From Trichoplax adhaerens (taxonomy: Eukaryota; Animalia; Placozoa), in assembly GCF_000150275.1 (NCBI RefSeq), contig NW_002060997.1, positions 3,061 through 13,225 of the forward strand: DNA of 10,165 nt, read 5' to 3'. The notes beneath the pieces were generated by a model, which worked only from the letters and a program-made list of their open reading frames with translations, did no database searches and was not told the DNA's origin. Made by a program: the position numbers and the translations under genes. Numbering within the stretch: the stretch's first letter is position 1; every line of letters begins with the position of its first letter. Shown one piece after another: positions 1,518 through 10,165 of this stretch.

Positions 1518-1830
1518 CTATCCACAGTTTACAAAGTAAATTAGTGATTTCAATTAGAGCCAAGAAAAGTGAATGGCGAGCATGCAGTAAGCAGCGTGCC
1601 TGTGCGATACTTTCTTAGTCCAAGTGAGGTTACTCGGTTGATATCTTGCTTATAATATTGTCCGCTGTAGACTCCATTCCTACTTCTATAGAGTGACAAG
1701 CTATTTTGCACAGTAGCTTGCAGCGCCGACTCTCTACTTGGTCTTCCTCTTCTTCTACTGCCTTCTACACGTGAAATGGCAGTCAACCATCAAACATCTT
1801 TTTTTCTCACTTTCTTTTTCCATACTACAG

Positions 1831-2228
1831 ATTTCTCTCTCATACTTATTAATCTGTGCTTTTGACAGATATTGTTGGGTGTTAGCATTGTCATCTTGCT
1901 TAGCAGGTACGTCTTTCAACCAGTTAAAGCAATCTTAATTAATCGATGTCATTTTAAACGCAAACCCTAACATTATTGCAATAATATAATCGTCCCTTTA
2001 TCGCCATTAGACCTATAGTTGACATTTTGGGTTGTGAACTGAATTTCTCTTATACTTGTTAATCTGTGTGTTTTATAGATATTACTGGGTGTTATCCCTG
2101 GACAATATCCTGGATATAAATGCAAATACTTTACAATTGGAAATCTGCTCGTCTATAAAGTTGTCTACAATGACGATCAAAAAATGGCTACACAATCCAA
2201 AGAAGTGATGATTATATTTGGTTACTTG
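1831..2228 (+). other. Duplicated ~53-nt segment (1831-1884 / 2043-2094) overlapping two candidate orphan exons (1831 or 1869..1906; 2079..2228)
   Basis: A long pyrimidine tract ends in tacAG at 1830 and a donor CAG|GTACGT lies at 1907, giving ISLSYLLICAFDRYCWVLALSSCLA. In the second copy, ttttatAG (2078) to TTG|GTATGC (2229) brackets an open 150-nt stretch (ILLGVIPGQYPGYKCKYFTIGNLLVYKVVYNDDQKMATQSKEVMIIFGYL). The duplication is directly visible. Exon status and product are not established. Confidence 0.35.
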
Positions 2229-3614
2229 GTATGCCCTACCTAACACTATTGAGTGCGGTGTTGTTACTCAATAAAATGCTTTAATAAAGGATGATTTCAA
2301 TGGCAAATATTGACTACGCCTTTAACAGTATCATATTGACCATTTTGTTGGACATGATGATATGTCCTCTCTCTTCAAATTTAGTAGTTCTTGCTACTTG
2401 TATCGAGTAGAGTACAGTATATAAAGTTTTTGAACTGGATGATGAAGTAAAGTTAATGCTGTAGATTATGGGCCATTGGTCAACAGTCGTGCCTGCTGTA
2501 TCCTGAAATAACAAACTACGGTCAACAAAATAACCAATTGCCCAACTTTAACCACAACGAAGCCTTGAAGGCAAGCGAAGAAATGACATTTGCTCTGAAC
2601 CCGTACAAGCCTGGCACAGCCATTGCTGCATAGTTTCAATAGTATCTCATAGGACACTTGGGCTGAAAATGGCGCCTTGAAGAATCATGAATTTGGACAT
2701 ATCCAACAACATGCACATAGCAGAATATCATTTCACTACCATTATATTTGTACGCGCATATTGAGGGTTGAAAATCGATTACCTTTGAACTGGCTACGTT
2801 GTAGGGAACATTTTTGCCTAATGTAATAGGATTTTTAGTGGGTAGAAGTTTACTCGTATGCCATCTTCAATTCTATTTGGTTCTATTTGCTGACTTTGCT
2901 TATCGTTAGAATAAGCAGCATACAGTGCAATTGATAGAATTATACCTACATTTCGGCCCAAAATAACATCAAACTATCATTAGCCAGTCATGAAAAAATT
3001 AAATTGGTAAGTTTGACATTTGCTTGAATTTCTATCACATTATTCGTTACTTTTGAACTAGAAATAGAAATTGAAGGTTTCCAAAAGACGTGGACAAAAG
3101 CCATCTTACTGTACATGCTATCTTAAGAATCTTATTCAATTATTAATGTCATTAACATTAACTTCTCATAAATTGATGCAAAAGATTCTTCACTAGCGTT
3201 GTGTCTAAACTTATCATCTACAATTAGATTTCATTATTCAGTGACAGTCCAGCCTCGGTCTTTGCAACATGGATGGTTGCATTTTCAAGATCAATTTCTA
3301 TTTACATTTATATATGAGTTTGTAGGAGCATCTTGAATTATTGTCCAACCTTTTAAATAACCGAATTGTTTGTATTTCTGTGTTGGAATACGAATCGTAT
3401 GCATATAAATTTGTACCCGACATACGCCTACTATGCCATTAATTAAATAAGCATAATATCAATTCGCTGACAAGTACCATAATCGATTATTGCAACAAGA
3501 CTTTATTCGAATTGGCACTAACTTGTCGTTTTTGTCAAGGACGAATATCATTTATATATGTTGAAGTTATCAAATCAACTCAACATTTTTCATTGACCAA
3601 TAGTCAAGGAAAAG

Positions 3615-4430
3615 ATGGCCGATAATAAATCCATCCACTCTATAATTCCTCCTCATATACAATCATTGTATGAAAATGGTGAAAAGTATAAGACTACCTA
3701 CAATTGAACCCAAGGATTATCTTATTATACGCAAGCTCTAGATGAGATTCAAGTGTTTTGCAATCCTTGTGTCAAGATGGATCGACTTCGATGCGATATA
3801 TGTCTTGATATCTGCGATATTTATATTTTACAAAAAGAACAGCAAAAGAATGGAAAGAAAAGGGACATCTCTGCCTACTTAACTGCAAGATAAAGTGAGA
3901 ATGGCTGAATAGTTAGACAGACAAAGTAAGATTAAGGGATGGCAACGGGATTGGAAAGAAGCACTGGAAGACTGTTATAAATCGCTGAACTTGAAATTAA
4001 AATGCTTCCATAAAAATGATCCACGCCTTGCTGATAGTTATCCGCAGATTGGGCGCATCTACCGTCATCAGGGCAAGTCTACAAAAGCGCTTTCTAAGTA
4101 TGACAAATCCCTTAAAATTGGATTATTAGTTCTTGGTCACAATCATCCCGATGTTATATAACAATATTGGAGTTGTCTATGAGAAACGAGGCGAGTATAA
4201 TTTGGCTCTTTCTACATATAACAAGCCACTCAAGATTCGATCATTACTTCCTGGTCACAGTCATCCTGATGTTGGGCTCTTATATAACAACATTGGAGTA
4301 TCTATTCTAGACAAGGAAGGCACCATGAGGCTCTGCATATGTATAATAAGTCACTCAGTATTATTCTACCAGCCTTAGGCGTAAATCATCCCGAAGTTGG
4401 AAAAAAACGAAAAACAATATGGCCATTACT
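3615..4430 (+). pseudogene. Disrupted paralogue of the 8959 TPR gene (N-terminal region plus about 4 TPR units)
   Basis: ATG 3615 gives MADNKSIHSIIPPHIQSLYENGEKYKTTYN*TQGLSYYTQALDEIQ...RLRCDICLDICDIYILQ, which aligns by eye with MANQTSNSTIFDEIESIRKKGVKYHGEGNYEDALFYFQKAVTQIK. In-frame stops: TGA 3705 and TAG 3910. Frameshifts: near 3840-3885, ~4155 (8 nt shorter than the next unit), ~4300 (1 nt) and ~4410. Reconstructed TPRs: ...EALEDCYKSLNLKLKCFHKNDPRLADSYPQIGRIYRHQGKSTKALSKYDKSLKIGLLVLGHNHPDV/LYNNIGVVYEKRGEYNLALSTYNKPLKIRSLLPGHSHPDVGLLYNNIGV/YSRQGRHHEALHMYNKSLSIILPALGVNHPEVG. Track ORFs 4133 and 4339 are pieces of this. Confidence 0.9.
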
Positions 4431-4627
4431 CCCCGGGTGCAACGATCACAGTATAATCAGTCAACGTCAATGGCGAAAAGAGGGAAAGATAATCATGATG
4501 TTAATCAACACGTCCAAGATATAGCTTCGTCAATCGACAACAGCATTTTAATATACTAGTATTCAAGACTACCATAAATACAGTCCTATATCATAACAAC
4601 CATATTCTGTACTTTTTTATCCTACAG

Positions 4628-5037
4628 ATTTACAAGAAAAGGAATATTACCATGCGTATACCAAGGCATTAAATCAAGGTCATTGCTATCATAATTTAAT
4701 ACGAGGCATGTTTATTGGCCCTCCCAATGTGGGTAAATCTTCTGTTAGAAAAGTATTTACTCAACAAGTATTAATCATTAATCAATCTCCTACACAAGTG
4801 GTTGAGAATTCTGATTTCATGGTGGAGACTGAATAGTATGGTATTCATAATTGAAAGAATTGTGACTGGACTGAGGTAGTAGACGATAAAGTCAAAACAA
4901 GCATCGATAGTCAAGAGAATATCAATCAGCAAATTACCCATGTGCATCCAATACATCGACCCGTTTTAACAGATAACCTACCATTGCCAAATTTACAAAA
5001 AGACAATGTGCAATCTCCTATAGTTAGTAATGCTTAA
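4628..5037 (+). pseudogene. Pseudo-exon encoding the N-terminal part of a P-loop GTPase, Roc (ROCO-family)-like
   Basis: Follows the acceptor-like ctttttatcctacAG (AG at 4626-4627). Frame +1 reads DLQEKEYYHAYTKALNQGHCYHNLIRGMFIGPPNVGKSSVRKVFTQQVLIINQSPTQVVENSDFMVETE*YGIHN*KNCDW. Walker A/G1 GPPNVGKS is at 4717-4740, preceded by a hydrophobic strand (IRGMFI) and the 'Y..AL..G' helix I recognise from invertebrate Roc domains. A candidate G2 Thr lies in SPT. Stops at 4834 (TAG) and 4852 (TGA). No G3/G4 motifs or COR domain are visible. Confidence 0.72.
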
Positions 5038-5120
5038 ACGATAGAACTATTAATCGATTGTTGCTATTTTTATTCCACTACTTTAGACCGATGGAATGAT
5101 ACCAAAGATGAAGGTAAACC

Positions 5121-5427
5121 TTGGCACTTTCTATGCTAAATATTGCTCACAAAATTCGATTGCGCTTATTTGGTAATCTTCATCTTCTTATAGCGAATTC
5201 ACTTCAGATAATGGCTGTTTGTCGCTCATATCTTGGCCAGCATAAAGTGGCTTTTACGATGCTAAATAATGTATTATACATTCGATTAGCACACCTTTCT
5301 AAAAATCATGCCCATATTGCAGACACTTATGAGCATATGGGGGATGTTGGTAGCAATAATGGGGACTATCAACAGGCTATTTCTAAATATAACATGTCAC
5401 TAGATATGAGACATGCAATCTTAAAAT
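5121..5427 (+). pseudogene. Fragment of about 2.5 diverged 42-aa TPR units
   Basis: LALSMLNIAHKIRLRLFGNLHLL-IANSLQIMAVCRSYLGQHKVAFTMLNNVLYIRLAHLSKNHAH-IADTYEHMGDVGSNNGDYQQAISKYNMSLDMRHAILK. The spacing IANS to IADT is exactly 42 aa. It starts mid-repeat on TTG with an in-frame stop just upstream, so it is not a stand-alone gene. Confidence 0.8.
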
Positions 5428-5501
5428 TTGTCATTTTTATTCTATGTTATTCCAGGATTCGACTACAAAATCGGATTCTAACTAAATATAAATAATACTA
5501 T

Positions 5502-5929: not shown

Positions 5930-8900
5930 ATCTCTATTACACATTCTACTCTTATTAGATGATTTAAATCATCAGAGTCGCTAATAGAAATCCATTAACG
6001 ATTTAACATATCGTCACTCTACTTTAGATAAAAATATGAATAAATATTTTTTTATGTACGGTAATGATGAACCGTAACAACCATCAACAATAAAACTTTT
6101 TCTGAGAAAGAAATAATTAATAGAATATCGGATTATAATTGTAATCTATAATAGCAAGAAAGATTACTATTTTCGTTGTGCGACATTCTAAAGTAAAATT
6201 GAAAGCACATTTCACGTATCGATACTTTAACTAGGTAAAGTAAGATGCTATTTCTATTATCTATCGAATAATAAAATTGCAAGAATTCAAACTTCCAACA
6301 AAAACTATTCATGATTTATTTTGCTTTTTTTCAAACACATTATTTCATTAATTAAAAATAGAGGACCTCATGCTGTAAATACGCTGAAAAATATTATGAC
6401 AGTTTATGTATGATATTGCCTTTGTAAAATGTAAATGTTACAGATTTTCTTATACATACACCTGTACTAAGAGAAGTGGATAGAAGAAAAGCACATTACA
6501 ATAGGCAAATTATTGGCGATAGCTAATTCAAATCTGATTATTGACGACAATCGCATACACTTTTTGGCCAAGATTATGCTTATTTGCTGTTTGAATTAAT
6601 CTATATAATCTGCCAATATCTACTCAATTTTGGTTAAAAGAGAACAAAGAAAAATTAGAAGCACATACGTTCAAAGTTACCAAACCTTGCTATTTCCCTC
6701 CTTCCACCAAAACCTCCACATAGTTTCAGGTCTTTGCAGCTTCTTAAGCAAGCAGAATTTACATATAAATTTCGCATTACTGGTAAAATACTGTAGTGAT
6801 ATAAACTATTAATGAATTATTAAGAATCACATTCAATATACCGTACTCAATTTCGATTGAAATATACGGTAATTAATATTACCAACAGCAATGACTTTTC
6901 CTGCAAGATCGTTCATTTATTATTATGCTGGATAGATGATTAAAAAATAATGATTTTCTACAATACCAGTAAAAGAATTTTTGAAAGAATTTATTAAAGT
7001 TCTGATATAGCATCTTGCAGCTACTATAACAAACAGCACGATTTCTTACTAATTTTATAATGTCAACTGTATCAGCCTAGCAATAACAATTTCAACTTAA
7101 TCCTACGTAAATTTCGGGGCTGCTCTATGTAAGTGTAATTGCATTACTAATCCCCATTTTAAAAGACCGTTACTTCTATTTAACTGATAGTACCGTTGTA
7201 AGCCATCATTTTGATGTTCTCTAGCCTAAAATACTAATTTTCCATGATTAGTTTTACTTCTTCGCAATAATACAGTTAATATAAATGATAAATACACTTG
7301 CAATTCCATGAATATGTGATTACGATATTATGATAAATCCTAACCAGAGTCAAGTCATTGGGCTCATGCTATATTTACGCTATATACTATATGCATGCTA
7401 TCTATGTATAGCATATACATATACTTTGATAATTCAATTTTGCCCTTCCCATACGATTATGGAAAATAAGTTTCCATTTGAAGACACTAGCAGCTATGCA
7501 ATTAGTGTTAGCTTTATGTAAGTGTTTCTTTAAGCAAGTATAATGAAGGAAGTCGGTGGTAGGCAATGTACGATATAGTAGATTAATGTTGAAGTATATC
7601 GACAGTTTATACTCGTCGCTATTTATCATTAGCTTCAATGAATATGTTCTTATTGCTTACTGCTGATTGTTATTGCTTAATAAAAATACGCAACTTAAAA
7701 TACCGATAATTATATTGCAAAACCACATCATTAATATTACATAACGTGAAGTATTTCTTTATTACCCTTTTCCAATAGCCTATAATCTGCGATTGCAGTT
7801 CTAATTTGCAAATTTTCAATTATGCTTTGTAGTCATGAAATAATATTAATTAACTTACGGTTACAGTAGTAGATTACCCTAAAAAAGATAAAAGCTATTT
7901 TAATTAGGTGCTAATTGAATATTATTAATTAATCAAGCTAGCAAGTCAGTCATTGAATGTATACTCGTATAATGATAGATTTTAATCGCATCGTTTTCAT
8001 TATACATATTTAATTTCAGTTACTGATGTTTTCGACATCAATGTGATAACTATGATATTTGAAAATAGGATTGAAAGTTTACGGATTTTAAATGAAATGG
8101 TGAATCTACCCTACGGCTTTAACTTGTATGATTTGTGCTATTTGGATTTTGTATGGTGAATTGAGTACGAATCACTTAAATCGTAAATTGAAATAATACA
8201 GACCACCTCTTATATGCATGGCATTATATAAGATTAAAAATAAACCTGCAATAAAATAGTCTATCTTAGTATCTTATATAAAATTGACACATTTAATAGA
8301 ATACTAGTTTATCCTCGTGTAAGTACCGTAAGTGTCATGTGCTATGCAGGTGATTTATACATTAGCTTTAGTTGAATTAGACATCAAGCAATTTTGTATT
8401 CATCAATCAATTTAATGATGCAAAATTATTATCCAATCAATGTTAATTCAATCTTTATTGGTAAGCGTGGAAGCTATTGTCATGTTCCTATTCTATTCAT
8501 GTTCATGCTAATCTTGAACTTATTGTACGTGTAGGCTCAACATTTGAGTCATTTTGATGCTAGTGTTGTGCTAATGATGCGTTTTTTAATTATTATTATA
8601 ATGATGATTGACATATTAGAAAAACGGATAGAAAGAAGTGTTGACAAGAATGCCTGCCCAATTTAATTTATTTCTTCTCCATCATCCTGATGAATTGTAA
8701 GAGAATAATGGATGAATGATTGAAAACCGCGAACAAATAAAGGCGTATCCGATTTGGCTAATTAGAGCACGCTCCTAACAGAAATAGACTTTGTAATGCT
8801 GATCTTGGTTTTAAAAAATCGAGCATCCATGATAGTGTGCTCTTTACGTATTTTATCACTCATTTGTACAGCGATCAAAACTGTTAACCCGATCGAGTAG

Positions 8901-8958
8901 ACAAATTGTGACTATTTTTCTCAAATTGTATATTTTGATTGTTGTTGAAAAGTAAAAT

Positions 8959-10165
8959 ATGGCCAATCAGACTAGCAATTCTACGATATTTGACGAGATT
9001 GAATCTATACGCAAAAAGGGCGTGAAATATCATGGCGAAGGCAATTATGAAGACGCGTTATTTTATTTTCAGAAAGCTGTAACTCAAATCAAATCGATAG
9101 CGGAGAGTAGCGATAGTCGTCGTCAACTTGAATATTCTATTTATCTCGCTATGGCTCAATCTTACCTGCAAAAATATCAATTGATAGAAGCCAATGAATA
9201 CAGTGGAAAAGCAGAAAAGTTAGCTGAGAAACTAGAAGAGGTCAAGATTTCTTATTGTTTCGATATCCAGGGCGACTGTAAACGACTTCAAAGTGATTTT
9301 ATGGGTGCTTTGAGTGATTACAACAAATCACTTCAAATAAAATTAAAATCGTTAGGGAGTGAACATCTTGATGTCTGTAAGTCCTATCATAACGTTGGCT
9401 TGGTCTACCAGAATCAAGGCAAGCATGACGAGGCTTTAAAGGAATACAATAAATCATTAAAGATTAAACTGACACAACTTGGTGATAATCATCCAAGTAT
9501 TGCTGATACATATAGCAATATTGGTCTTGTCTATGATCGTCAAGGCAAGTATGATGACGCTCTATCAATGTATAACAAGTCACTCAAGATTCGACAAACA
9601 CAACTTGGCGACAATCATCCAAGTATTGCTACAACATATAACAACATTGGTCTTGTCTATCATCATCAAGGCAAGTATGATGACGCTCTATCAATGTATA
9701 ACAAGTCACTCAAGATTCGACAAACACAACTTGGCGACAATCATCCAAGTATTGCTACAACATATCACAACATTGCAAGTGTCTATGATAATCAAGGCAA
9801 GTATGATGACGCTCTATCAATGTATAACAAGTCACTCAAGATTAATCAAACACAACTTGGCGACAATCATCCAAGTATTGCTACAACATATCACAACATT
9901 GCAAGTGTCTATGATAATCAAGGCAAGTATGATGACGCTCTATCAATGTATAACAAGTCACTCAAGATTAAACTGACACAACTTGGCGACAATCATCCAA
10001 GTATTGCTGATACATATAACAACATTGCAAATGTCTATCATCGTCAAGGCAAGTATGATGACGCTCTATCAATGTATAACAAGTCACTCAAGATTCGACA
10101 AACACAACTTGGCGACAATCATCCAAGTATTGCTACAACATATCACAACATTGCAAGTGTCTATG
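8959..10165 (+). CDS. 42-aa TPR repeat protein (kinesin light chain / nephrocystin-3-like TPR class), 5' part, truncated by the window end
   Basis: Frame +1 is open from ATG 8959 to the window end (402 codons, no stop, so absent from the ORF track). Manual translation: MANQTSNSTIFDEIESIRKKGVKYHGEGNYEDALFYFQKAVTQIKSIAESSDSRRQLEYSIYLAMAQSYLQKYQLIEANEYSGKAEKLAEKLEEVKISYCFDIQGDCKRLQSDFMGALSDYNKSLQIKLKSLGSEHLDVCKSYHNVGLVYQNQGKHDEALKEYNKSLKIKLTQLGDNHPSIADTYSNIGLVYDRQGKYDDALSMYNKSLKIRQTQLGDNHPSIATTYNNIGLVYHHQGK... The TPR consensus Y4-I7-G/A8-Y11-G15-Y17-A20-Y24-S27-L28 recurs every 42 aa. Confidence 0.95.
   Translation, partial: MANQTSNSTIFDEIESIRKKGVKYHGEGNYEDALFYFQKAVTQIKSIAESSDSRRQLEYSIYLAMAQSYLQKYQLIEANEYSGKAEKLAEKLEEVKISYCFDIQGDCKRLQSDFMGALSDYNKSLQIKLKSLGSEHLDVCKSYHNVGLVYQNQGKHDEALKEYNKSLKIKLTQLGDNHPSIADTYSNIGLVYDRQGKYDDALSMYNKSLKIRQTQLGDNHPSIATTYNNIGLVYHHQGKYDDALSMYNKSLKIRQTQLGDNHPSIATTYHNIASVYDNQGKYDDALSMYNKSLKINQTQLGDNHPSIATTYHNIASVYDNQGKYDDALSMYNKSLKIKLTQLGDNHPSIADTYNNIANVYHRQGKYDDALSMYNKSLKIRQTQLGDNHPSIATTYHNIASVY
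9250..10165 (+). repeat. Coding tandem repeat, 126-bp unit; 2 diverged leading units (9250, 9376) then near-identical units (9502, 9628, 9754, 9880, 10006, 10132 partial)
   Basis: CAAGGCAAG recurs at 9415, 9541, 9667, 9793, 9919 and 10045, an exact 126-nt period. A 51-nt block (CAAGGC...CTCAAGATT) and a 33-nt block (ACACAACTTGGC...ATTGCT) are identical in five consecutive units. Confidence 0.98.

What the first reader, a model, noticed from the sequence alone, without database searches (positions are those of the whole stretch)
9502..10165. TPR array with a hypervariable code confined to ligand-groove positions and no silent changes
Seen: numbering from the Ala as TPR position 1, units differ only at positions 2, 5, 8/9, 12/13 and 31/32. 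The units read 9502 D-S-GL-DR-RQ; 9628 T-N-GL-HH-RQ; 9754 T-H-AS-DN-NQ; 9880 T-H-AS-DN-KL; 10006 D-N-AN-HR-RQ; 10132 T-H-AS. From 9541 on I find no synonymous difference between units, and many differences are multi-nucleotide codon swaps (GAT/ACA, GGT CTT/GCA AGT, AAA CTG/CGA CAA). Established: helix-A positions 2, 5, 6, 9, 12 and 13 line the concave binding groove of TPR superhelices; here Asn6 is invariant, like a backbone-binding Asn ladder. Homogenised repeats with a few diversified surface codons are the signature of fungal NLR high-internal-conservation repeats (e.g. HET-E/D WD40) and are conceptually like TALE RVDs or the PPR code. Inference: this is a diversifying recognition module, possibly an innate-immune, symbiont- or allo-recognition receptor, or a sequence-reading modular binder, in a probable early-branching animal.
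Basis: partly seen in the sequence, partly recalled or inferred. Interest (0 to 1): 0.9.

Follow-up and report, generated by a model that had tools for sequence, protein, structure and literature searches.

The report
Hypervariable-groove TPR array in Trichoplax
The end of this window is the first exon of one of 100 or more related genes of a placozoan-type animal; its near-identical 42-residue TPR repeats differ almost only at the residues that line the binding groove, and the closest sister gene splices this exon to a death domain, so it is probably a fast-evolving receptor of a kind known from fungi but barely described in animals.

Summary
From 9502 the 126-nt units have identical frameworks. 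All amino-acid differences lie at unit positions 2, 5, 8, 9, 12, 13, 31 and 32, and there is one silent change (codon 6, 9517-9519).

The array belongs to an intronless exon that starts at ATG 8959 and is cut at 10165 by a 24.8-kb assembly gap. At least 100 loci in this genome share its 139-residue N-terminal cap.

In 86 units of the closest paralogues silent changes are common (pS 0.13). Positions 2, 5, 9, 12, 13 and 31 still change 2.6-4.4 times faster than silent sites. Positions 8 and 32 do not.

Positions 2, 5, 6 and 12 align without gaps to experimentally defined groove residues of kinesin light chain 1.

Thirty-seven of 102 family loci have COR-A or Death hits downstream on the same strand. 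In the closest paralogue, contigs from public runs join the TPR exon, at a family-wide AG|GT site, to a death-domain exon.

My reading is a diversifying sensor exon of a TPR-Death (sometimes Roc-COR) signalling family. A TALE-like code is not supported, and the function is untested.

The scan has already reported this family from other pieces of this genome.

The parts
8959..10165 (+). Assembled part (402 codons) of the large first coding exon of a TPR-array gene. It is open from ATG 8959 to the end of the window, where a run of N begins.
   Evidence: Translation. A stop lies directly upstream of the ATG, and M1 is invariant in 14 paralogues. N run at scaffold C1360 13226-38064. Pfam TPR_12 E 5.8e-94.
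8959..9375 (+). N-terminal cap of 139 residues (degenerate helical repeats), the signature of the gene family.
   Evidence: It matches 128 places in the same genome, mostly at the start of long open frames of 400-1675 aa. Ten of them are 95-98% identical. The model is helical with low confidence (pLDDT about 50-65).
9376..9501 (+). First 42-residue TPR unit. It is divergent and not homogenised (many silent and replacement differences from the later units).
   Evidence: Codon table. Unit-profile score 78.6 against 105-108 for the following units.
9502..10131 (+). Five homogenised 126-nt (42-residue) TPR units. The framework is 100% identical at the protein level. Variation lies only in codons 2, 5, 8, 9, 12, 13, 31 and 32 of each unit (first unit: 9505-9507, 9514-9516, 9523-9528, 9535-9540, 9592-9597; add 126 for each later unit).
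   Evidence: Modelled with pLDDT above 90 as helix A (unit positions 39 to 12), loop 13-15, helix B 16-34 and loop 35-38.
10132..10165 (+). Sixth homogenised unit, of which only the first 11 codons are assembled. It is cut by the scaffold gap.

Best explanation
Window 8959-10165 is the start of the large first exon of a member of a placozoan gene family with 100 or more loci. The exon encodes a family-specific N-terminal cap followed by an array of 42-residue, kinesin-light-chain-type TPR repeats.

How the array evolves. Unequal crossing-over and gene conversion keep the repeat framework almost identical, within the array and among its closest paralogues. Selection keeps the units different at six positions. 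Five of these (2, 5, 9, 12, 13) lie on the helix-A face that lines the concave groove of TPR superhelices. The sixth (31) lies near the end of the longer helix B.

How it probably works (inferred). An invariant Asn at position 6 forms a ladder along the groove, probably holding the backbone of an extended ligand. The polar variable residues around it set specificity. The array is therefore a germline-diversified binding surface.

Output. In the closest paralogue that could be examined, the TPR exon is spliced through a short exon to a death-domain exon. About a third of the family loci have Death and/or Roc-COR modules just downstream on the same strand. The most likely function is a sensor whose ligand binding is passed on through death-domain assembly, with or without a Roc-COR GTPase switch. 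This is NLR-like logic without NACHT or NB-ARC.

Shown: the sequence pattern, the selection statistics, the fold prediction, the genomic linkage and the splice joints in a paralogue. Inferred: ligand binding, signalling, any role in non-self or symbiont recognition, and that this particular copy, whose 3' part lies in an assembly gap, has the same downstream exons.
For: - Pattern in the window.
- Family size and shared cap. Long single open frames with up to 35 units.
- Selection, pairwise: pN is 0.25-0.54 at positions 2, 5, 9, 12, 13 and 31 against pooled pS 0.13.
- Selection, on a tree: parsimony counts give replacement rates 2.6-4.4 times the pooled silent rate at 2, 5, 9, 12, 13 and 31 (Poisson P 9e-5 to 6e-13, Bonferroni-significant). 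The 34 framework codons lie mostly at 0-0.8 (one, codon 29, at 1.05). A second subfamily repeats the result at 2, 9, 12 and 31.
- Recombination-robust check: 215 unit pairs have an identical 102-nt framework yet differ at a mean of 7.8 of the 24 variable-codon nucleotides.
- Selection rather than local hypermutation: third codon positions of variable codons 5, 9 and 13 are almost invariant (pi 0.00-0.05) while first and second positions vary.
- Fold: gap-free 42-residue alignment to KLC1 TPR (E 7e-48). AlphaFold array region pLDDT above 90. Foldseek best hit KLC1-TPR 7ai4 (target-normalised TM 0.86, rmsd 2.7 A).
- Groove mapping: the KLC1 groove residues K340/K382, N343, N344/N386 and R266 correspond to unit positions 2, 5, 6 and 12 (PMC3314626 read, register). 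TPR positions 2, 5, 9, 12 and 13 are the hypervariable concave-face positions, and HOP contacts its ligand through 2, 5, 6, 9, 12 and 13 (PMC1261162).
- Architecture: 37 of 102 cap loci have COR-A and/or Death hits within 12 kb downstream on the same strand, against 0 and 3 on the opposite strand.
- Every family open frame ends just after a conserved AG|GT site, even where the reading frame differs.
- Contigs of two public runs join L017:3224 to 1475 exactly at that site with GT..AG ends, and one run also joins 1359 to 1073. Exon 2 is open, and exon 3 is in frame and is a Death domain (E 7.6e-12).
- Trichoplax sp. H2 gene models have TPR-Death (P0022) and TPR-Roc-COR-Death (P0001) architectures.
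Against: - The 3' part of this very gene is missing (24.8-kb N gap), so its death-domain or Roc-COR exons are assumed from paralogues.
- The public runs are only guessed to be RNA and are contigs, not reads. Unspliced contigs crossing the same donor site also exist, so a TPR-only product may be made as well.
- About two thirds of the cap loci show no COR-A or Death hit within 12 kb, although the hit lists are lower bounds.
- Recombination among units inflates parsimony counts at polymorphic sites. No recombination-aware codon model was run.
- Positions 8 and 32 show no excess of replacements. I could not place 31/32 on the concave face because no model coordinates are available.
- No ligand, no expression response and no population data support an immune or recognition role.
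Confidence: 0.65

Rival explanations
1. This copy, and perhaps much of the family, makes a stand-alone TPR scaffold or adaptor protein that ends at the in-frame stop just after the array. It would have no signalling domain and might act as a decoy, a regulator or a reservoir of repeat cassettes for the domain-bearing paralogues.
For: All family open frames reach a stop within 3-60 nt after the AG|GT site. Contigs that cross the donor site unspliced exist in runs X6 and X12. Sixty-five of 102 cap loci have no COR-A or Death hit within 12 kb downstream.
Against: The AG|GT site is conserved even when the frame differs, which argues for a splice donor rather than coding sequence. Spliced joints to a death-domain exon are seen in the closest paralogue. 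Death hits lie downstream of at least 4 of the 10 closest paralogues (C1028, C1333, C1414 twice), and a fifth has a truncated death-like open frame with no Pfam hit. The hit lists are lower bounds.
Confidence: 0.15
2. The variable positions are merely unconstrained surface residues that drift, while gene conversion homogenises everything else. There would be no selection for diversity and no special binding function.
For: The variable residues are polar surface residues. Concerted evolution is evident: within-array and within-subfamily framework divergence is 0.4-3%, against 8-17% between subfamilies.
Against: Drift cannot exceed the silent rate, yet six positions run at 2.6-4.4 times it. Pairwise pN at these positions reaches 0.54 against pS 0.13. 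Conversion tracts cannot skip individual codons 9-21 nt apart, so the 215 framework-identical pairs with about 8 variable-codon differences need selection that retains differences. Other exposed positions (for example 16, 19, 22, 26, 29) are conserved.
Confidence: 0.07
3. The array is a linear code reader like TALE or PPR proteins. Each unit would read one monomer of a polymer (nucleic acid or peptide) through a di-residue or short code.
For: It has modular identical units with variation confined to a few positions, an invariant Asn ladder, and polar or charged variable residues (N, D, H, S, T, R, K).
Against: Six to eight positions vary per unit. The 86 units carry 70 distinct words and 58 distinct helix-A words, far from a small alphabet. 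Apart from the pairs 8/9 and 31/32 the positions assort almost freely. The closest solved relatives bind peptides in the groove. No nucleic-acid-binding family ranks among the strong Pfam matches; the PPR hits are weak, have no stretch passing on its own and lie under the TPR matches.
Confidence: 0.05
4. The pattern is an artefact or a dead copy: a collapsed or chimeric assembly of many paralogous repeats at a contig end, or a truncated pseudogene.
For: The array stops at an assembly gap, and several paralogues sit on small contigs that end in the array. A broken family member lies 3.5 kb upstream in the same window.
Against: The same pattern occurs in about 20 other arrays, including some on multi-megabase scaffolds. 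The frame is open for all 402 assembled codons. Independent public runs from five studies hold 43-69% of the sampled 31-letter words of 8700-10165. A collapsed consensus would not give clean codon-level alternatives with an invariant framework.
Confidence: 0.06

Closest known systems
High-internal-conservation (HIC) TPR/ANK/WD repeats of fungal NOD-like receptors, e.g. Podospora anserina Pa_2_10340 (Dyrka et al. 2014, PMC4986451); solved 42-residue repeat from P. anserina, PDB 4Y6C/4Y6W (Marold et al. 2015)
   Same: Both are 42-residue KLC-type TPR units with more than 85% internal identity. Both show concerted evolution plus positive selection at a few positions, which in the fungal case map to the concave helical face (there modelled on KLC2). 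Both belong to large, variable gene families. PDB 4y6c and 4y6w match the window array at E 4e-17 and 3e-18.
   Different: The fungal arrays are C-terminal to a NACHT or NB-ARC domain. Here the array is N-terminal, sits in an animal, and is joined to Death and sometimes Roc-COR modules. No NOD domain was found in the exon. Repeat-number polymorphism among individuals, shown in Podospora, was not tested here.
Kinesin light chain TPR domain (KLC1/KLC2; PDB 7AI4, 3NF1, 3ZFW, 6FUZ)
   Same: This is the best solved relative by sequence and by fold. It has the same 42-residue register, an Asn-rich helix-A groove (N343/N344/N386) and peptide ligands bound in the groove (PMC3314626).
   Different: KLC has six non-identical, slowly evolving repeats and a heptad-repeat region that binds the kinesin heavy chain. 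Here there are 5 to 35 homogenised units with hypervariable groove residues, and no such region was detected within the 402 assembled residues.
ROCO proteins with repeat sensors: Trichoplax ROCO genes with TPR, LRR, CARD and death domains (Civiero et al. 2014, PMC4104024); brown-alga LRR-ROCO and NB-ARC-TPR candidate receptors (Zambounis et al. 2012, PMC3341825; PMC11378527); DAPK1 (Roc-COR plus death domain)
   Same: In family members, repeat arrays are joined to a Roc-COR GTPase and a death domain (P0001; 26 loci with COR-A downstream). There is diversifying selection on the repeats, gene clustering and high turnover, as in Ectocarpus.
   Different: Civiero et al. listed at least 17 ROCO genes and did not describe homogenised or hypervariable arrays. 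Ectocarpus uses one repeat per exon and exon shuffling, whereas here the whole array is one exon. The closest paralogue examined goes from the TPR exon straight to a Death domain, with no Roc-COR seen in the held sequence.
Placozoan and Hydra NLR-like genes (NACHT/NB-ARC with TPR or WD40 repeats; Kamm et al. 2019, PMC6321704)
   Same: Same organism group, with TPR repeats as the repeat module and death-fold effector domains.
   Different: Those genes are defined by a central NACHT or NB-ARC domain with C-terminal repeats, and the authors judged them unlikely to be pattern receptors. This family has the repeats at the N-terminus and lacks NACHT/NB-ARC. That census searched only for NACHT and NB-ARC domains, so it would not have counted a family that lacks both.

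Membership tests
TPR, 42-residue KLC-type class (Pfam TPR_12 / '42PR') | Profile match above the curated cut-off | tested here: met
   TPR_12 308.8 bits (cut-off 30.1) and TPR_10 219 bits.
TPR, 42-residue KLC-type class (Pfam TPR_12 / '42PR') | 42-residue period with the canonical TPR packing residues at positions 4, 7, 8, 11, 20, 24 and 27 | tested here: met
   Period 126 nt. Y4, I7, G/A8, Y11, A20, Y24 and S27 are invariant or conservative in all units. The alignment to KLC1 is gap-free, and against 34-residue consensus TPRs there is an 8-residue insertion.
TPR, 42-residue KLC-type class (Pfam TPR_12 / '42PR') | Helix-turn-helix repeats stacked into a KLC-like solenoid | tested here: met
   The AlphaFold2 model has pLDDT above 90 in the array with alternating 16- and 19-residue helices. 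Foldseek best hit KLC1-TPR, target-normalised TM 0.86. This is a prediction only.
High-internal-conservation (HIC) diversifying repeats (sense of Dyrka et al. 2014) | More than 85% identity between repeats over at least 100 residues | tested here: met
   Mean pairwise identity of the five full units is 87.4% (range 83-95%) over 210 residues. The framework is 100% identical.
High-internal-conservation (HIC) diversifying repeats (sense of Dyrka et al. 2014) | Positive selection at a few positions on the binding surface | tested here: met
   Replacement rates are 2.6-4.4 times the silent rate at positions 2, 5, 9, 12, 13 and 31, and pN exceeds pS. The method was counting only, with no recombination-aware model. 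Surface location rests on homology to KLC1 and HOP and is not established for position 31.
High-internal-conservation (HIC) diversifying repeats (sense of Dyrka et al. 2014) | Repeat-number polymorphism among individuals or strains | not tested
   Paralogues carry 5 to 35 units, and one array has a 12-unit internal duplication. No comparison among individuals was made.
NOD-like receptor / STAND | Central NACHT or NB-ARC NTPase in the same protein | tested here: not met
   There is no NACHT or NB-ARC match in the 402 assembled residues. None of the 43 NB-ARC hits in the genome lies on this scaffold or within 12 kb downstream of a family locus checked by eye. The unassembled 3' part cannot be excluded.
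ROCO (Roc-COR GTPase) family | Roc and COR domains in the same gene | not testable with these tools
   The 3' part of this gene lies in the N gap. Among paralogues, 26 of 102 have COR-A downstream on the same strand, and the H2 model P0001 joins TPR, Roc, COR-A and Death.
Death-domain proteins | Death domain encoded in the same transcript | tested here: inconclusive
   Met for the closest paralogue examined (C1333): GT..AG joints from the TPR exon to a short exon to a Death exon (Pfam E 7.6e-12). Not testable for the window gene itself.
TALE / PPR-type modular code readers | One or two specificity residues per repeat drawn from a small alphabet, with one repeat per monomer | tested here: not met
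   Six to eight variable positions per unit, and 70 distinct words in 86 units. The only PPR/PPR_2 matches are weak, have no stretch passing on its own and lie under the TPR matches.

The most novel reading that the evidence does not exclude
Placozoans carry a germline repertoire of 100 or more intracellular receptors. In these, a homogenised TPR superhelix with a hypervariable groove is the sensor, and a death domain is the output, with or without a Roc-COR GTPase in place of the NACHT/NB-ARC switch. This would be an animal counterpart of fungal HIC-repeat NLRs, used to recognise microbes, the intracellular symbionts or conspecific non-self. Alternative splicing at the conserved donor could yield both signalling and sensor-only (decoy or regulator) forms.
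Probability: 0.35. Interest if true: 0.85.

Novelty: new variant of a known kind. Interest (0 to 1): 0.62.

Why it matters
Placozoans have no LRR-type NLRs. The published survey of their innate immunity concluded that their NACHT/NB-ARC proteins are unlikely to be pattern receptors (PMC6321704), so how these animals tell microbes and symbionts apart is an open question.

A family of 100 or more genes with a groove under diversifying selection, wired to death domains and Roc-COR switches, is a concrete candidate repertoire. It is testable through expression after microbial challenge, binding screens and variation among placozoan lineages.

It would also show three further things:
- The combination of homogenised framework and hypervariable surface, known from fungal, bacterial and algal receptors, arose in animals too.
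- A ROCO GTPase, or no switch at all, can take the place of the NOD module.
- Natural arrays of identical 42-residue TPR units with six variable positions offer a ready design template for peptide binders.

Tried and rejected
- Extending the gene beyond the window. Scaffold C1360 reads N from 13226 to 38064, and the last 681 bases are unrelated. The unit count and the 3' exons of this copy are therefore unknown.
- Fetching more paralogous loci (C1028, C1333 5' part, C1404, C1396). Roc-COR content downstream of the C1333 death exon could not be checked.
- Orthologue search. Searching with the N-terminal cap returned one protein (Trichoplax sp. H2, 51% identity). The whole 402 residues return generic TPR_12 proteins from diatoms, rotifers and cyanobacteria at 24-59% identity, and H2 paralogues at 41-48%. 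No near-identical orthologue was visible.
- NB-ARC linkage. There are 43 NB-ARC hits in the genome, none next to the family loci examined. The NLR sensu stricto reading was rejected.
- Targeted hypermutation as the source of variation. Rejected because the third positions of variable codons 5, 9 and 13 are invariant.
- Mapping positions 31/32 onto the groove. Not possible, because the model's coordinates are not returned. Only secondary structure and homology arguments are available.
- Literature. I found no paper describing homogenised or hypervariable TPR arrays in placozoans. The nearest statements are '0.8% of metazoan repeats are HIC' (PMC4986451) and 'at least 17 ROCO genes with TPR, LRR, CARD and death domains' (PMC4104024).
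- The spliced model of the paralogue was examined exon by exon by reference. The joined sequence was not built for, or sent to, any search.
Full report
**Observation.** The window's last 1.2 kb is one open frame starting at ATG 8959. A stop lies immediately upstream, and the Met is invariant in 14 paralogues. After 139 residues of degenerate helical repeats come 42-residue units at 9376 (divergent), 9502, 9628, 9754, 9880 and 10006, and a truncated one at 10132. TRF reports period 126, 5.5 copies and 92% matches.

The codon table and the column tally show 18 variable nucleotide columns among the units from 9502 on. Seventeen lie in codons 2, 5, 8, 9, 12, 13, 31 and 32 and all change the residue. 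One is silent (codon 6, 9517-9519). The framework is 100% identical at the protein level, and the eight variable positions are 34% identical. Unit pairs differ at 0-1 of 102 framework nucleotides and at 3-15 of 24 variable-codon nucleotides.

**Where the array ends.** The window is a contig inside scaffold C1360, flanked by runs of N (1644-3060 and 13226-38064). The array is cut by a 24.8-kb assembly gap, so the unit count and the 3' end of this gene are unknown.

**Family.** The 694-nt array matches at least 198 places in the same 105.6-Mb genome. The 139-residue cap matches 128 places, mostly at the start of long open frames of 400-1675 aa. Ten of these are 95-98% identical. In 22 fetched loci I found 457 complete units in single open frames carrying up to 35 units.

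Framework divergence is 0.4% within the window array and 1-3.5% within and between the arrays of the closest subfamily. It is 8-17% between subfamilies. Homogenisation therefore acts at the subfamily level. One array contains a 12-unit internal duplication, a trace of unequal crossing-over.

**Selection.** In the 86 homogenised units of the closest subfamily, silent variation is plentiful (pooled pS 0.13). 'No silent changes' is thus a property of this young array only. Pairwise pN is 0.25-0.54 at positions 2, 5, 9, 12, 13 and 31.

I counted changes by parsimony on a tree built from all sites, which is conservative for the variable sites. Replacement rates were 2.6-4.4 times the pooled silent rate at positions 2, 5, 9, 12, 13 and 31 (Poisson P 9e-5 to 6e-13). 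They were 0.3 and 1.3 at positions 8 and 32, and mostly 0-0.8 at the 34 framework codons (one, codon 29, at 1.05). A second subfamily gives 2, 9, 12 and 31.

Parsimony counts are inflated by recombination, so I added a check that does not depend on a tree. In it, 215 unit pairs have identical frameworks yet differ at a mean of 7.8 variable-codon nucleotides. Conversion tracts cannot skip codons 9-21 nt apart, so differences must be retained by selection.

Third positions of variable codons 5, 9 and 13 are invariant while first and second positions vary. That argues against local hypermutation. Positions 8/9 and 31/32 are coupled (Cramer's V 0.91 and 0.67). The other positions assort almost freely, giving 70 distinct words in 86 units.

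**Structure.**
- The array aligns without gaps to KLC1 TPR (E 7e-48). Against 34-residue consensus TPRs it shows an 8-residue insertion after unit position 30.
- AlphaFold2 models the array with pLDDT above 90: helix A from unit position 39 to 12, loop 13-15, helix B 16-34, loop 35-38. The best fold match is KLC1-TPR (target-normalised TM 0.86).
- In this register the KLC1 groove residues named by Zhu et al. (K340/K382, N343, N344/N386, R266; PMC3314626) fall on unit positions 2, 5, 6 and 12.
- Magliery and Regan found canonical positions 2, 5, 9, 12 and 13 (plus 33 and 34) to be the hypervariable concave-face positions, and 2, 5, 6, 9, 12 and 13 to be the HOP contacts (PMC1261162).
- The overlap of the selected sites with these a-priori sets is significant (P 4e-5 to 7e-6).
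- Position 8 is the canonical small packing residue.
- Positions 31/32 lie in the 42-residue-specific extension of helix B, on the same helical stripe as the packing residues 20, 24 and 27. I could not verify that they reach the groove.

**What the exon is attached to.**
- A Trichoplax sp. H2 protein with a 51%-identical cap carries TPR, Roc, COR-A and Death domains (P0001). Another H2 model is TPR plus Death (P0022).
- In this genome, 37 of 102 cap loci have COR-A and/or Death hits within 12 kb downstream on the same strand (26 and 30 loci). On the opposite strand the counts are 0 and 3.
- Every family open frame ends 3-60 nt after a conserved AG|GT (CAG|GTGAYT, or GCAG|GTACC in the window's subfamily), even where the frame differs. 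That marks a splice donor.
- I laid contigs of four public runs on the closest paralogue for which I held downstream sequence (C1333, locus L017). A joint from 3224 to 1475 falls exactly at that donor with GT..AG ends in two runs, and a second GT..AG joint runs from 1359 to 1073 in one run. The central part of the first skipped stretch (1797-2431) is uncovered in all four runs.
- Exon 2 (117 nt) is open. Exon 3 is in frame and is a Death domain (E 7.6e-12).
- I checked the spliced model exon by exon by reference and did not search a joined sequence.
- Unspliced contigs across the donor also exist, so a TPR-only product is possible.
- The runs are only guessed to be RNA. The canonical joints are the argument that they are.

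**Mechanism (inferred).** The array forms a superhelix whose groove carries an invariant Asn6 ladder, as in KLC and HOP, flanked by polar variable residues (mostly N, D, H, S, T, R, K). Unequal crossing-over and conversion copy units and keep the fold uniform. Selection preserves and shuffles the groove words. Binding is reported through death-domain assembly, with a Roc-COR switch in part of the family.

**Comparison and novelty.** The evolutionary regime is that of fungal HIC-repeat NLRs (PMC4986451) and, more loosely, of the brown-alga NB-ARC-TPR and LRR-ROCO genes (PMC3341825). The fold is that of the kinesin light chain. The family is not an NLR in the strict sense (no NACHT or NB-ARC) and not a TALE/PPR-type code.

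Civiero et al. noted at least 17 Trichoplax ROCO genes with TPR and death domains (PMC4104024), without the hypervariable arrays. Kamm et al. counted only NACHT/NB-ARC genes (PMC6321704). I found no paper describing this regime in an animal.

The scan itself has already reported the same family from other pieces of this genome. Those notes reached the same reading: hypervariable groove, TPR-death genes, offshoot of a TPR-Roc-COR-death family. This window adds another copy rather than a new discovery.

**Limits.** The copy is truncated by the assembly. The function is untested. No recombination-aware codon model was run. No model coordinates were available. The organism name (Trichoplax adhaerens) is my inference from assembly size, scaffold count and best named hits.

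Noticed in passing
window 3597-5495 (+): A broken relative lies 3.5 kb upstream of the gene. It has a cap-like start (3597-3890, with an in-frame stop at 3705-3707), about three KLC-type TPR units spread over frames 0, 1 and 0 (3913-4521), and a Roc-like P-loop stretch (4597-4833, motif GPPNVGKSS; tblastn to P0001 residues 645-700, 37%, E 1e-5; no Pfam hit on its own). More TPR-like sequence follows at 5118-5492. It looks like a decayed short TPR-Roc family member.
   Followed up: partly
L012:596-838 (+) = scaffold C1360:596-838, upstream of the window across the first N gap: A death-domain open frame on the same strand (Pfam Death E 1.7e-9; 45% identical to the C-terminal death domain of P0001). 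It is probably the last exon of the preceding family gene, so the window sits in a tandem cluster.
   Followed up: partly
L017:2432-3250 (C1333, closest paralogue): Besides the spliced joints, contigs of runs X3, X6, X12 and X1 cover the first about 800 nt after the donor site, and some cross it unspliced. This suggests intron retention or an alternative 3' end that would give a TPR-only protein ending at the in-frame stop.
   Followed up: no
L029:2822-7081 (+) = C1413:902821-907080: This 30-unit array contains a 12-unit (504-residue) internal duplication. Units 254-674 recur almost identically at 758-1178. It is a recent unequal crossing-over event inside one array.
   Followed up: no
Ends of the family open frames in L015, L016, L017, L020, L025-L027, L031, L033 and L034: A conserved splice-donor-like AG|GT (CAG|GTGAYT or GCAG|GTACC) lies 3-60 nt before each stop. 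In L034 it overlaps the stop in another frame. Gene models that end these genes at the stop probably miss downstream exons.
   Followed up: yes
C1404:937000-972000 (-), and C1396, C1389, C1392, C1381, C1375, C1411, C1368: There are tandem clusters of cap-TPR, COR-A and Death hits at a regular spacing of about 2.5 kb and 4.5-5 kb on one strand. These are repeated whole TPR-Roc-COR-Death gene units.
   Followed up: partly
Proteins P0005, P0006, P0014, P0037, P0058, P0082, P0102, P0111: Among the more similar TPR_12 arrays outside placozoans, several from bdelloid and other rotifers and from metagenomes are fused to ADP-ribosyltransferase domains (PF01129, PF03496). This is a different effector on the same kind of repeat.
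   Followed up: no
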